From assembly GCA_002269645.1 (NCBI GenBank), contig NIVC01003995.1, positions 26,995-66,034 of the forward strand: a stretch of 39,040 nt of DNA, read 5' to 3'. The notes beneath the pieces were generated by a model, which had not been told where the DNA came from, did not search any database, and saw nothing but the letters and a program-made list of their open reading frames with translations. This stretch comes from Macrostomum lignano (lineage: Eukaryota). Below are positions 32,375 through 33,565 of this stretch, one piece after another. The position numbers and the translations under genes were made by a program. Each line of letters begins with the position of its first letter. Positions within the stretch are counted from its first letter, which is position 1.

Positions 32375-33565
32375 TCAGCCAATATTTTCCTGCAGGACTC
32401 GCAGCCGCATCTGCGGGTCGATGTACACCTCGTCCAGCTGCCGGGAGAGCGTGTTGTGCTCACACATCCACTCGCCAGGACTGCGTCGATAGCGCAGCCT
32501 GCGGGCCGCTAGAGCCGACATCCGGTAGAACGACACGGCCTGGAAGCAGCTCTCCACCTTCACCGGCGGCAGGCTGCGCGGCGCGTTCCAAAGCGACTTC
32601 TCGTAGTCGACCACCGGGTACTTGGTGTCCTCGCCGAAGCGCTTGTTCAGGTGGAAGCTCAGCGTGCACGGGTCGTAGAGGTGGCTGTCCTGAGTAGTGT
32701 GGGCGCACAGCTGCTGCAGCTTGGGCTTGGCCGCAAAGTAGTAAAGTCCCTGGGCGATGCTGTCCAGATCCCAGTCCTGCCAGGTGATGTCCGGGTCCAC
32801 GATCAGCAGGAGCGATGCCCGGTCGGCCAGGTGCTCGTAGATGTAGTCCAGGTACAGGTTGCGGAGGGCGGACATGATCAGGCCGCGCTCGACCTCCTCG
32901 GAGAAGGTGCGGTTTATTTGGACACCTGGCAGGTGCTGGCGGCCGCTGCCGTAGCGGACGTTGATTTCGCACGGCAGCGCAGAGTTGACCCGGCCGCAGC
33001 CCAGCAGCCGCACATTCGGGTCGGTCAGCGTCATGTTGTACAGGAAGCTGCGAGTCGAGTCTGTCGAGTCGTTCTCGACCAGCACCAGCCAGGAATCGTT
33101 GAACAGAGCTCTGAGGCGCTGGACATTGTGCATGGTGCTCGGCAGGCCGTCCATGCCGTTGCGCACGGTGGCTGCCACCACCGCCGACTGGCTGTGGAGC
33201 CACGCCCTGCCGGCCGCTGCTCGGCGCGAGCGGCTCCTCTCGGCTTCGGAGAGCCGCATGAGCGGCAGCAGCAGGCCGGGCCTGTCGAAGCGGTACAGCG
33301 ACTCGCGCATGCCGCGGACCAGCCGGTTGTAGTTCTCCTCGAAGGTGCCGTCACGCATTCGCTCTGACAGTCCGGAGATTTTATTATCAAAACCGGGGCG
33401 CTTCAGCTGCAGGGCGGTCAGCAGTAGGGTCACGGCGACGGCCACCGTGGTGATGCCTATTAGGACATTTCGCTCAGTCAACCAGAGAACGCGGCGATTT
33501 CCGAGTTGTCTGGAGCAGAAGAGGCTCCCGGAAGTGTTGATCAGACGAGGTCCAGTAATTAGCAT
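32375..33565 (-). CDS. Intronless type II membrane GT-A glycosyltransferase, CAP59/cryptococcal mannosyltransferase-like, 396 aa
   Basis: N-terminal TM (VLIGITTVAVAVTLLLTAL); motifs TVRN, LVENDSTDST, SALRN, IVDPD (DxD), LYDP, VKVESCF, CEH, VYIDP. Confidence 0.82.
   Translation of the reverse strand: MLITGPRLINTSGSLFCSRQLGNRRVLWLTERNVLIGITTVAVAVTLLLTALQLKRPGFDNKISGLSERMRDGTFEENYNRLVRGMRESLYRFDRPGLLLPLMRLSEAERSRSRRAAAGRAWLHSQSAVVAATVRNGMDGLPSTMHNVQRLRALFNDSWLVLVENDSTDSTRSFLYNMTLTDPNVRLLGCGRVNSALPCEINVRYGSGRQHLPGVQINRTFSEEVERGLIMSALRNLYLDYIYEHLADRASLLLIVDPDITWQDWDLDSIAQGLYYFAAKPKLQQLCAHTTQDSHLYDPCTLSFHLNKRFGEDTKYPVVDYEKSLWNAPRSLPPVKVESCFQAVSFYRMSALAARRLRYRRSPGEWMCEHNTLSRQLDEVYIDPQMRLRVLQENIG

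What the first reader, a model, noticed from the sequence alone, without database searches (positions are those of the whole stretch)
32375..33565. Intronless CAP59-like glycosyltransferase in an intron-rich animal locus: horizontal-transfer candidate
Seen: a single 396-aa ORF with no intron, whereas the two upstream genes are heavily spliced. It has a TM anchor and the motif series RN / vENDStDsT / aLRN / DxD / YD / V.SCF / CEH / yIdP. It is GC-rich like the host exons and flanked by host-style repeats. A T-rich acceptor (ttttttaag, AG at 33578-33577) lies 11 nt upstream of the ATG. Established: this motif order typifies the cryptococcal mannosyltransferase 1/CAP59 family and related bacterial, algal and giant-virus GT-A enzymes, and is not a standard bilaterian family. 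Inference: a domesticated foreign gene, possibly trans-spliced, making a non-standard glycan for mucus, adhesive or egg capsule. The usual SCFGG reads SCFQA here, hinting at altered donor specificity.
Basis: partly seen in the sequence, partly recalled or inferred. Interest (0 to 1): 0.75.

Follow-up and report, generated by a model that had tools for sequence, protein, structure and literature searches.

The report
Giant-virus-type glycosyltransferase gene in a flatworm
The flatworm Macrostomum lignano carries, among ordinary animal genes, a working family of sugar-transferring enzymes whose nearest identifiable relatives are giant-virus genes, so it is a well-supported case of an animal keeping and multiplying a foreign gene, though the donor is not proven.

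Summary
The 396-aa intronless ORF at 32375-33565 (-) is real.

The window is Macrostomum lignano DNA. A voltage-gated cation-channel gene with at least 11 exon blocks lies 13 kb away.

The protein is a type II membrane GT-A glycosyltransferase. It scores 23.6 bits against Pfam PF11735 (CAP59), below the 28.8-bit cut-off, but 182.6 bits against a profile built only from non-flatworm relatives.

Those relatives are mostly giant-virus genes: GVMAGs, Noumeavirus, Marseillevirus LCMAC102, ChoanoV1, and metagenomic contigs with D5 primase, Rpb5 and topoisomerase IA. No relative from another named animal turned up among 1.84 billion representative proteins.

The gene is not a lone insert. M. lignano has at least 6 divergent paralogue groups on 0.4-0.8 Mb scaffolds beside tubulin, cyclophilin and CHD1. 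They are monophyletic (200/200 bootstraps) and under purifying selection (dN/dS 0.1-0.5). One has gained a GT-AG intron.

An old horizontal acquisition followed by expansion is the best reading. The donor is unresolved: the deep tree has no support, and the sister sequence is an orphan metagenomic protein.

Trans-splicing and any role in mucus or adhesive are untested.

The parts
32375..33565 (-). Complete single-exon CDS (396 aa plus stop) of a type II membrane GT-A glycosyltransferase
   Evidence: ORF list and sequence. An identical CDS is annotated on M. lignano contig NIVC01002945.1.
33410..33466 (-). Signal-anchor transmembrane segment, residues 34-52 (VLIGITTVAVAVTLLLTAL)
   Evidence: It is the only segment with KD19 above 1.6. 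The N-tail has 5 K/R against 1 D/E. AlphaFold2 models a helix at 28-54.
32387..33190 (-). GT-A catalytic domain, residues about 126-393
   Evidence: AlphaFold2 pLDDT is mostly above 90 here. Foldseek matches GT-A enzymes. PF11735 aligns over 131-369. The virus-type profile aligns over 111-393 at 182.6 bits.
33053..33079 (-). VENDSTDST nucleotide-binding motif, residues 163-171
   Evidence: E164, N165, S167 and D169 are invariant in 60 family members. The motif aligns to the GT2 motif VNDGSKDKT of sll0501.
32789..32797 (-). DPD (DxD) putative metal-binding motif, residues 257-259, at the end of strand 252-256
   Evidence: D259 is invariant and D257 at least 90% conserved. Strand position comes from the model.
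32456..32464 (-). CEH motif, residues 368-370. H370 is a candidate third metal ligand (inference).
   Evidence: C368 is invariant; E369 and H370 are at least 90% conserved.
33577..33586 (-). TTTTTTTAAG, the candidate 3' splice or trans-splice acceptor 11 nt upstream of the ATG (function untested)
   Evidence: Sequence. It reads TTTTTTAAAG in the second copy, is absent from the paralogues' 5' flanks, and does not fit [T/C]TNCAG.
32162..32167 (-). AATAAA poly(A) signal candidate, 210 nt after the stop codon
   Evidence: Pattern scan of the 3' flank.
31486..31661 (.). Host-type 22-nt tandem repeat downstream of the gene (context)
   Evidence: TRF.
34066..34438 (.). Host-type 29/87-nt tandem repeat upstream of the gene (context)
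   Evidence: TRF.

Best explanation
The ORF is a functional nuclear gene of Macrostomum lignano. It encodes a type II (N-in) membrane protein with a lumenal, metal-dependent GT-A glycosyltransferase domain, and it most likely works in the Golgi or ER.

It belongs to a subfamily of the CAP59/GT69-like (PF11735) superfamily whose identifiable members are mostly in giant viruses (Nucleocytoviricota).

A single ancient horizontal acquisition by an ancestor of macrostomid flatworms was followed by naturalisation and duplication. Naturalisation shows as host codon usage, a poly(A) signal, transcription, and intron gain in one copy. Duplication produced at least 6 divergent paralogue groups kept under purifying selection.

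Inferred mechanism: VENDSxDxT binds the nucleotide, and DPD (257-259) plus H370 hold Mn2+. A sugar is then transferred from a nucleotide sugar to a glycan or protein acceptor in the secretory pathway.

The sugar and the acceptor are unknown. The only biochemical precedent in the superfamily is GDP-mannose alpha-1,3-mannosyl transfer by Cmt1p.

The gene, fold, topology, integration, expansion and selection are shown. The foreign origin is strongly inferred. A giant-virus-lineage donor is only the leading candidate.
For: Family and fold:
- PF11735 aligns full length at E 4.7e-5.
- 54 of 60 relatives hit PF11735 and 39 of 60 hit GT2.
- The AlphaFold2 model has pLDDT 82.7.
- The best BFVD match is the Marseillevirus LCMAC102 glycosyltransferase at E 1e-24, followed by Sylvanvirus and ChoanoV1. 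PDB matches are generic GT-A enzymes.
- The window protein scores 182.6 bits against a profile of 93 non-flatworm members.

Distribution:
- Among 1.84 billion representative proteins, only M. lignano paralogues and a few flatworm-like fragments score above 140 bits. Scores then fall to 134 bits or less for metagenomic proteins.
- Every context I examined for these looks like a giant virus: D5 primase-helicase, topoisomerase IA, Rpb5, PIF1, Fapy glycosylase, collagen, and dense ORFan genes.
- IMG/VR holds 41 loci, including GVMAGs and a 376,207-nt genome that equals Noumeavirus in length.
- The prokaryote scan found only 10 loci in 185,579 species, all MAGs. The best of them is 99.9% identical to a GVMAG contig.
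- Verified bacterial members score 61 bits or less, against 61-134 bits for virus-type members.

Integration and function:
- A channel gene lies in the same window.
- A second copy about 99% identical exists.
- Paralogues sit beside tubulin, cyclophilins and CHD1 on 0.4-0.8 Mb scaffolds.
- GC3 is 0.84 against the host's 0.86.
- P0004 has a GT-AG intron filled with a tandem repeat.
- dN/dS is 0.11-0.48.
- Gene models in this assembly are built from RNA-seq.
- The flatworm clade is recovered in 200 of 200 bootstraps.
Against: - The deep branching is unresolved: every deeper placement has under 25% support.
- Only neighbour-joining trees were possible.
- The sister in 70% of bootstraps, P0012, is an orphan protein on a 1.3-kb, 37%-GC metagenomic contig of unknown origin. 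It lacks a TM anchor and could be an exon of a eukaryotic gene.
- Genuine bacterial homologues exist in Bacteroidota polysaccharide clusters.
- The prokaryote and IMG/VR scans used a single peptide pattern (VENDSxDxT(R)), so counts are lower bounds.
- I had no fungal GT69 sequences for a direct comparison.
- I inspected no RNA reads and have no biochemistry.
Confidence: 0.7

Rival explanations
1. Vertical descent: the gene is an ancient eukaryotic (opisthokont or older) glycosyltransferase. It was retained in macrostomid flatworms, lost in nearly all other sampled animals, and captured separately by giant viruses from their protist hosts.
For: The superfamily (PF11735/GT69) is common in fungi. 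The paralogue divergence is deep, with dS saturated. The sister P0012 may be eukaryotic. The tree backbone is unresolved.
Against: No named animal other than M. lignano appeared among the hits I could label. The window protein is far closer to the virus-type profile (182.6 bits) than to the fungal-centred Pfam model (23.6 bits). This reading requires very many independent losses across Metazoa.
Confidence: 0.18
2. Horizontal transfer from a bacterium, with giant viruses acquiring the gene separately.
For: Real homologues lie in Bacteroidota polysaccharide clusters with GT1, sulfotransferase, FkbM and MBOAT genes, and in a proteobacterial-type MAG next to MFS transporters.
Against: Bacterial members score 61 bits or less against the flatworm profile, versus 61-134 bits for virus-type members. 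They lack the N-terminal signal anchor, and several lack the conserved LGCG and Cys positions. A bacterial sequence falls in the sister group in only 10 of 200 bootstraps. They are rare: 10 loci in 185,579 species, one of which is really a GVMAG contig.
Confidence: 0.08
3. Contamination or chimeric assembly: the ORF comes from food diatoms, a virus or a microbe and was wrongly joined to flatworm DNA.
For: The foreign-looking family and the lack of introns are the only points in favour.
Against: The same contig carries a multi-exon animal channel gene. A second copy about 99% identical has the same flanks. Five paralogues lie on 0.4-0.8 Mb scaffolds beside tubulin, cyclophilin and CHD1. GC3 is host-like. 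One paralogue has a spliceosomal intron containing a host-type tandem repeat.
Confidence: 0.02
4. Decaying relic: the ORF is an unexpressed or non-functional leftover of an old insertion.
For: I inspected no RNA reads for this exact copy. One homologue from another sample (L006) has a frameshift.
Against: The 396-codon frame is intact. All invariant family residues are kept. dN/dS against the paralogues is 0.11-0.48. The two copies have identical CDS while their flanks differ. The gene is called in an RNA-seq-based annotation.
Confidence: 0.03

Closest known systems
Giant-virus (Nucleocytoviricota) CAP59-like glycosyltransferases, e.g. Marseillevirus LCMAC102 A0A481YUL9, the Noumeavirus/Marseilleviridae homologue, GVMAG and ChoanoV1 proteins
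   Same: N-terminal signal anchor followed by a GT-A domain of about 270-300 aa. Shared invariant residues are R135, E164, N165, S167, D169, R172, C199, R235, D259 and C368, with CEH near the C-terminus. The best structural match has E 1e-24 and TM-score 0.78 normalised to the target; the profile score is 182.6 bits.
   Different: Identity is only 22-32%. The flatworm proteins have an extra conserved stem of about 70 aa (SLYRFDRPGxLLPLMRLS...AGRAWL), an insertion RYxSGRxHxPG after C199, a shorter loop after LCAxT, D-x-C-T in place of D-x-[YF]-A, DPD in place of D[LM]D, and SCFQA[VF] in place of SCF[GNS]G[FLA]. In viruses the gene lies in glycosyltransferase clusters with GT25, PLOD-GT and Gly_transf_sug genes. 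In the flatworm it stands alone among host genes.
Fungal CAP59/Cmt1p family (Pfam PF11735, CAZy GT69): C. neoformans Cmt1p, A. fumigatus ClpA, N. crassa GT69-2
   Same: The same superfamily domain aligns end to end (profile positions 5-232 of 242). Both have type II membrane topology, and the fungal members are Golgi-localised.
   Different: The window protein scores 23.6 bits, below the 28.8-bit gathering score. GDP-Man alpha-1,3-mannosyltransferase activity is shown only for fungal members (PMC8092235) and cannot be transferred at this distance.
GT2-type GT-A enzymes (PF00535), e.g. sll0501/GtrB-like enzymes, RmlT, and the COLGALT1 GT-A domains
   Same: GT-A Rossmann-like fold. VENDSxDxT corresponds to the GT2 VNDGSxDxT motif, and a DxD follows a beta strand.
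   Different: There is only fold-level or N-terminal-motif similarity: PDB sequence E-values are 0.12 or worse and Foldseek identity is 12-15%. The family has no solved structure.

Membership tests
Pfam PF11735 CAP59_mtransfer / CAZy GT69 | Whole-protein score at or above Pfam's gathering cut-off (28.8 bits) | tested here: not met
   23.6 bits, E 4.7e-5. Among 60 relatives, 54 match at E<0.01, the best at 7e-15.
Pfam PF11735 CAP59_mtransfer / CAZy GT69 | Alignment across the whole catalytic-domain model | tested here: met
   Residues 131-369 align to profile positions 5-232 of 242.
Pfam PF11735 CAP59_mtransfer / CAZy GT69 | GDP-mannose alpha-1,3-mannosyltransferase activity (Cmt1p) | not testable with these tools
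   Needs an enzyme assay. The precedent comes from PMC8092235.
Pfam PF11735 CAP59_mtransfer / CAZy GT69 | Type II membrane topology with a lumenal catalytic domain (Golgi) | tested here: met
   There is a single TM at 34-52 and a positive N-tail. Six Cys and four N-x-S/T sequons lie on the lumenal side. Localisation itself was not tested.
GT-A fold, DxD-type glycosyltransferases | Rossmann-like GT-A fold with an acidic DxD after a beta strand | tested here: met
   AlphaFold2 pLDDT 82.7 with the core above 90. Strand 252-256 is followed by D257-P-D259. Foldseek hits to GT-A enzymes have probability 1.00.
Giant-virus-type CAP59-like subfamily (defined here from 93 non-flatworm members) | Strong full-domain match to a profile that excludes flatworm sequences | tested here: met
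   182.6 bits over residues 111-393. All seven flatworm sequences tested score 142-189 bits.
Giant-virus-type CAP59-like subfamily (defined here from 93 non-flatworm members) | Invariant residues R135, E164, N165, S167, D169, R172, C199, R235, D259, C368 | tested here: met
   All are present in the window protein.
Giant-virus-type CAP59-like subfamily (defined here from 93 non-flatworm members) | SCF-x-G-[FLA] motif before the YR | tested here: not met
   The window has SCFQAV. All the flatworm paralogues aligned have Q-A at these positions.
Horizontally acquired gene in an animal genome | Physical linkage to bona fide host genes, not contamination | tested here: met
   Channel gene in the window. 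Paralogues next to tubulin, cyclophilins and CHD1. A second near-identical copy exists.
Horizontally acquired gene in an animal genome | Absence from other animals; closest relatives outside Metazoa | tested here: met
   In the exhaustive search, only M. lignano and flatworm-like fragments score above 140 bits, then virus-type metagenomic proteins follow. Limit: most hits are unnamed, and no animal genome database was searchable.
Horizontally acquired gene in an animal genome | Supported phylogenetic nesting inside a donor clade | tested here: inconclusive
   The flatworm clade is recovered in 200/200 bootstraps, but the sister is the orphan P0012 (140/200) and deeper nodes have under 25% support.
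SL trans-spliced gene of M. lignano | Acceptor of the enriched type [T/C]TNCAG close to the 5' end | tested here: not met
   The site is TTTTTTTAAG, reads TTTTTTAAAG in the second copy, and is not shared by the paralogues. The motif comes from PMC8629364. An AAG acceptor is still possible.
SL trans-spliced gene of M. lignano | RNA reads joining the 35-nt spliced leader to the 5' end | not testable with these tools
   No read-level RNA data were available. The prior is 30-39% of genes.

The most novel reading that the evidence does not exclude
A glycosyltransferase gene of a giant virus, or of its protist host (for example one met through diet or infection), was captured by an ancestor of macrostomid flatworms. 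It then radiated into a lineage-specific family of Golgi enzymes that build a glycan no other animal makes. That would be a functional virus-to-bilaterian transfer of glycosylation machinery.
Probability: 0.3. Interest if true: 0.7.

Novelty: new member of a known kind. Interest (0 to 1): 0.5.

Why it matters
Well-documented functional gene transfers into bilaterian animals are few. Ones involving giant-virus-type genes are rarer still.

This transferred gene is not a dead insert. It is an expanded, selected and transcribed family in a genetically tractable model: M. lignano has transgenesis, RNAi and in situ protocols. A knock-down could therefore show what a foreign glycosyltransferase family contributes to an animal.

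All these proteins are currently annotated only as "hypothetical protein". The family has no solved structure and no assayed member outside fungi.

Practically, the analysis also shows that one contig is filed both as a bacterial MAG and as a giant-virus MAG. That is a caution for anyone inferring a donor from database labels.

Tried and rejected
- NCBIfam gave no hit. A PDB sequence search with the single protein gave only noise, and with the family profile only a weak match to a GT2 N-terminal motif.
- The word-indexed homologue search with a 60-sequence alignment returned almost nothing, because the candidate list was swamped by low-complexity words. The same search with the sister P0012 found no close or named relative.
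- Three cluster look-ups covering 30 of the top hits gave no organism names beyond M. lignano.
- My first bootstrap run was invalid: the Kimura distance is undefined at p>0.85. I redid it with a Poisson distance.
- My first translation of the L014 "bacterial" homologue was in the wrong frame and produced a spurious grouping. It is corrected.
- "BAC_L013" was rejected as bacterial evidence after it proved 99.87% identical to a GVMAG contig.
- A larger viral insertion (endogenous giant-virus element) was rejected. The other long ORFs in the window are tandem-repeat artefacts or have no Pfam hit, and the paralogue flanks hold ordinary animal genes.
- An operon position was rejected: no gene is called within 10 kb upstream on the same strand.
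- Literature searches for the paralogue IDs, and for HGT of this family in Macrostomum, found nothing.
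Full report
OBSERVATION

The window holds an uninterrupted 396-codon ORF at 32375..33565 on the minus strand. In-frame stops lie 2 and 5 codons upstream of the ATG.

Residues 34-52 are the only strongly hydrophobic segment (KD19 2.47). They follow an N-tail with five K/R and one D/E, which fits a type II signal anchor. 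Six cysteines and four N-x-S/T sequons lie on the predicted lumenal side.

The TTTTTTTAAG with its AG at 33578-33577, 11 nt before the ATG, is there. An AATAAA lies 210 nt after the stop codon. Tandem repeats flank the gene at 31486-31661 and 34066-34438.

WHERE IT IS

The identical protein and CDS are annotated on contig NIVC01002945.1 of the Macrostomum lignano Mlig_3_7 assembly, GCA_002269645.1. That contig is about 99% identical to the window, but it differs by indels in tandem repeats and ends inside the window's span. The gene and its flanks therefore exist in two near-identical copies. This agrees with the 180 Mb of duplicated blocks at 95% identity or more reported for this assembly (PMC5730564).

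The window also carries at least 11 exon-like blocks of a four-domain voltage-gated cation channel between about 4352 and 19044 on the plus strand. The last block hits Ion_trans at E 8e-34, plus GPHH and an IQ motif. The "intron-rich animal locus" is therefore confirmed.

The other long ORFs in the window are translations of tandem repeats, apart from a 307-aa ORF at 30465-31385 that has no Pfam hit. The ORF's GC3 (0.84) equals that of the channel exon (0.86).

WHAT THE PROTEIN IS

Pfam PF11735 (CAP59_mtransfer) aligns over almost its whole length (5-232 of 242), but at 23.6 bits, below the 28.8-bit gathering score. NCBIfam and a PDB sequence search give nothing useful.

An AlphaFold2 model built on a 60-sequence alignment is confident: pLDDT 82.7, pTM 0.77, core above 90. 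It shows a TM helix at 28-54 and a Rossmann-like GT-A domain, with strand 252-256 leading into D257-P-D259.

Foldseek against PDB returns only generic GT-A enzymes at 12-15% identity: the COLGALT1 GT-A domains, RmlT, PcManGT and GalNAc-Ts. Against BFVD the best match is a glycosyltransferase of Marseillevirus LCMAC102 (E 1.1e-24, 24% identity, TM-score 0.78 normalised to the target). Sylvanvirus and two Mimiviridae ChoanoV1 proteins follow.

A family profile aligns VENDSkDdTR to the GT2 motif VNDGSKDKT of sll0501. Ten residues are invariant across 60 members: R135, E164, N165, S167, D169, R172, C199, R235, D259 and C368. D257, S339, F341, E369 and H370 are at least 90% conserved.

The mechanism I infer is nucleotide-sugar binding by VENDSxDxT and metal binding by DPD plus H370.

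RELATIVES

The word-indexed search found only M. lignano proteins and one 932-bp metagenomic contig.

An exhaustive profile search of 1.84 billion representative proteins found 781 relatives at E<=1e-3. The top ones are all M. lignano paralogues: Mlig031518, Mlig030790, Mlig008975, Mlig008488 g1-g4 and Mlig033934. A few flatworm-like fragments also rank there.

Scores then fall from 324 bits or more for these full-length paralogues to 134 bits or less for proteins of about 320 aa, mostly rich in Lys, Asn and Ile, from metagenomes and SRA assemblies. Of 60 members, 54 hit PF11735 individually and 39 hit GT2.

All four contexts I could inspect look like giant viruses:
- P0070: bacterial-type topoisomerase IA, D5-type primase-helicase, GT25, PLOD-GT, cullin and Kelch.
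- P0160, on a 52-kb contig: FtsJ, AAA, RING, Gly_transf_sug, GT25 and Fapy glycosylase.
- P0028, on a 37-kb contig: PIF1, Rpb5, RING, WSC and collagen.
- P0053, on a 311-kb Tara scaffold: densely packed ORFans with kinases and NUDIX.

IMG/VR holds 41 loci. They include three explicit GVMAGs and seven genomes of 347-380 kb. One of these is exactly 376,207 nt, the published size of Noumeavirus (PMC7695187).

The scan of prokaryotic species genomes found only 10 loci in 185,579 species, all of them MAGs. Some are genuinely bacterial: Bacteroidota clusters with GT1, sulfotransferase, FkbM and MBOAT genes, and a GC-rich MAG with MFS transporters. The best-scoring one, however, is 99.87% identical over 10,122 nt to GVMAG-S-3300012000-65.

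Against the flatworm profile:
- Virus-type members score 61-134 bits.
- Verified bacterial members score 61 bits or less.
- Small GC-rich IMG/VR contigs score 52 bits or less.

Conversely, a profile built from 93 non-flatworm members scores the window protein at 182.6 bits over residues 111-393, against 23.6 bits for Pfam's model. The gene therefore belongs to a virus-type subfamily of the CAP59-like superfamily, not to the fungal GT69 core.

THE FLATWORM FAMILY

The paralogues lie on scaffolds of 439, 832, 533 and 675 kb next to tubulin, CHD1 and two cyclophilins.

Four of the five paralogue genes examined are single-exon. P0004 has a 677-nt intron with a GT donor and a TTTAG acceptor, largely made of a short tandem repeat, inside the catalytic domain near residue 226.

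Pairwise dS runs from 0.5 to saturation and dN/dS from 0.11 to 0.48. The expansion is therefore old and the copies are constrained.

Gene models of this assembly derive from RNA-seq (StringTie/TACO/TBONE plus TransDecoder; PMC5730564), so the annotated members are transcribed. I did not see read-level data.

Flatworm-specific characters:
- a conserved stem of about 70 aa before the catalytic domain;
- an insertion RYxSGRxHxPG after C199;
- a short loop after LCAxT;
- D-x-C-T;
- DPD;
- SCFQA[VF] in place of SCF[GNS]G[FLA].

PHYLOGENY

Neighbour-joining with bootstrapping (162 taxa, 297 columns) recovers the flatworm clade in 200 of 200 replicates. Its sister is P0012 in 140 of 200, and a verified bacterial sequence falls in the sister group in 10 of 200 (an earlier version is).

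P0012 also shares the D-x-C-T motif and the short loop. However, it is an orphan: its best relatives are at 32% identity. It sits on a 1,342-bp, 37%-GC ENA scaffold and lacks a TM anchor. Its frame stays open 32 codons upstream of the ATG, past a TTTTTAG, so it may be an exon of a eukaryotic gene.

Deeper nodes have under 25% support. The donor therefore cannot be named from the tree. The preference for a giant-virus-lineage source rests on profile scores, shared architecture and the taxonomic make-up of the subfamily.

TRANS-SPLICING AND FUNCTION

[quoted passage not shown] The window's TTTTTTTAAG does not fit that motif, reads TTTTTTAAAG in the second copy, and has no counterpart in the paralogues' unrelated 5' flanks.

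No gene is called within 10 kb upstream on the same strand, so an operon position is unlikely. Trans-splicing is therefore neither supported nor excluded.

Nothing here bears on tissue, sugar or acceptor. The only assayed members of the superfamily are fungal: Cmt1p uses GDP-Man to make an alpha-1,3-mannose linkage, ClpA acts on GPI anchors, and GT69-2 is in the Golgi (PMC8092235).

VERDICT

- The family call is right at superfamily level.
- The foreign origin is well supported.
- The gene is one member of an old, expanded and naturalised family, not a lone insert.
- The donor is unresolved.
- The trans-splicing and glycan-role ideas remain untested.

I found no publication describing this family in Macrostomum.

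Noticed in passing
window 4352-19044 (+): A four-domain voltage-gated cation channel gene (Nav/Cav type) with at least 11 exon-like blocks. Its introns are packed with tandem repeats. The last exon (17977-19044) carries Ion_trans, GPHH and an IQ motif.
   Followed up: partly
window 17392-17461 (+): A tRNA-like Rfam hit (RF00005, 32.1 bits, just above the 29-bit cut-off) inside an intron of the channel gene. ARAGORN finds no tRNA there, so it may be a tRNA-derived repeat or a pseudogene.
   Followed up: partly
window 30465-31385 (+): A 307-aa ATG-initiated ORF of normal complexity with no Pfam hit, about 1 kb beyond the 3' end of the glycosyltransferase gene. By eye it resembles the tail of a retroelement ORF (HSDSQATL..., Cys/His-rich end). 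This is unconfirmed.
   Followed up: partly
window 14712-15803 (-), 22663-24030 (-), 25719-27137 (+), 11423-12646 (+): Very long ORFs (364-473 aa) that are only translations of tandem repeats (SIYL, GHCL, STCSTLHLFDSPPVRL units). They are a trap for ORF-based gene finding in this genome.
   Followed up: yes
L013 (RGVZ01000129.1, 'MAG: bacterium WB9_2_064') versus L037 (IMGVR GVMAG-S-3300012000-65): The two are 99.87% identical over 10,122 nt, so the same element is filed as a bacterial MAG contig in one collection and as a giant-virus MAG in another. Database labels cannot be used at face value for donor inference.
   Followed up: partly
L008 10679-11355 (paralogue P0004, NIVC01000572.1): The only intron seen in the family is 677 nt, GT...AG, and consists mostly of a short tandem repeat (GTGATGCTATGGTGTCTAGA-like units). 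This suggests intron gain linked to repeat insertion.
   Followed up: partly
L006 (Logan SRR31628434 contig, 1193 bp), around position 327-330: A 61%-identical flatworm-type homologue from another sample is split into two frames at the LTDPNV/LLGC region. This is either a sequencing indel or a pseudogene, and the source organism is unknown.
   Followed up: no
P0006 (UniRef A0A1I8FAJ4, 646 aa, named 'RING-type E3 ubiquitin transferase', M. lignano): This model contains scrambled fragments of the glycosyltransferase family at its C-terminus. It looks like a chimeric or frame-shifted gene model from an older assembly, and its name is misleading.
   Followed up: no
L003 and the 17-kb ENA/JGI contig (P0070); BFVD A0A5B8HVK7 (ChoanoV1): Some giant-virus members fuse the CAP59-like domain to DUF4214. 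In viral contigs the gene sits beside other glycosyltransferases (GT25, PLOD-GT, Gly_transf_sug), which suggests viral glycosylation clusters.
   Followed up: no
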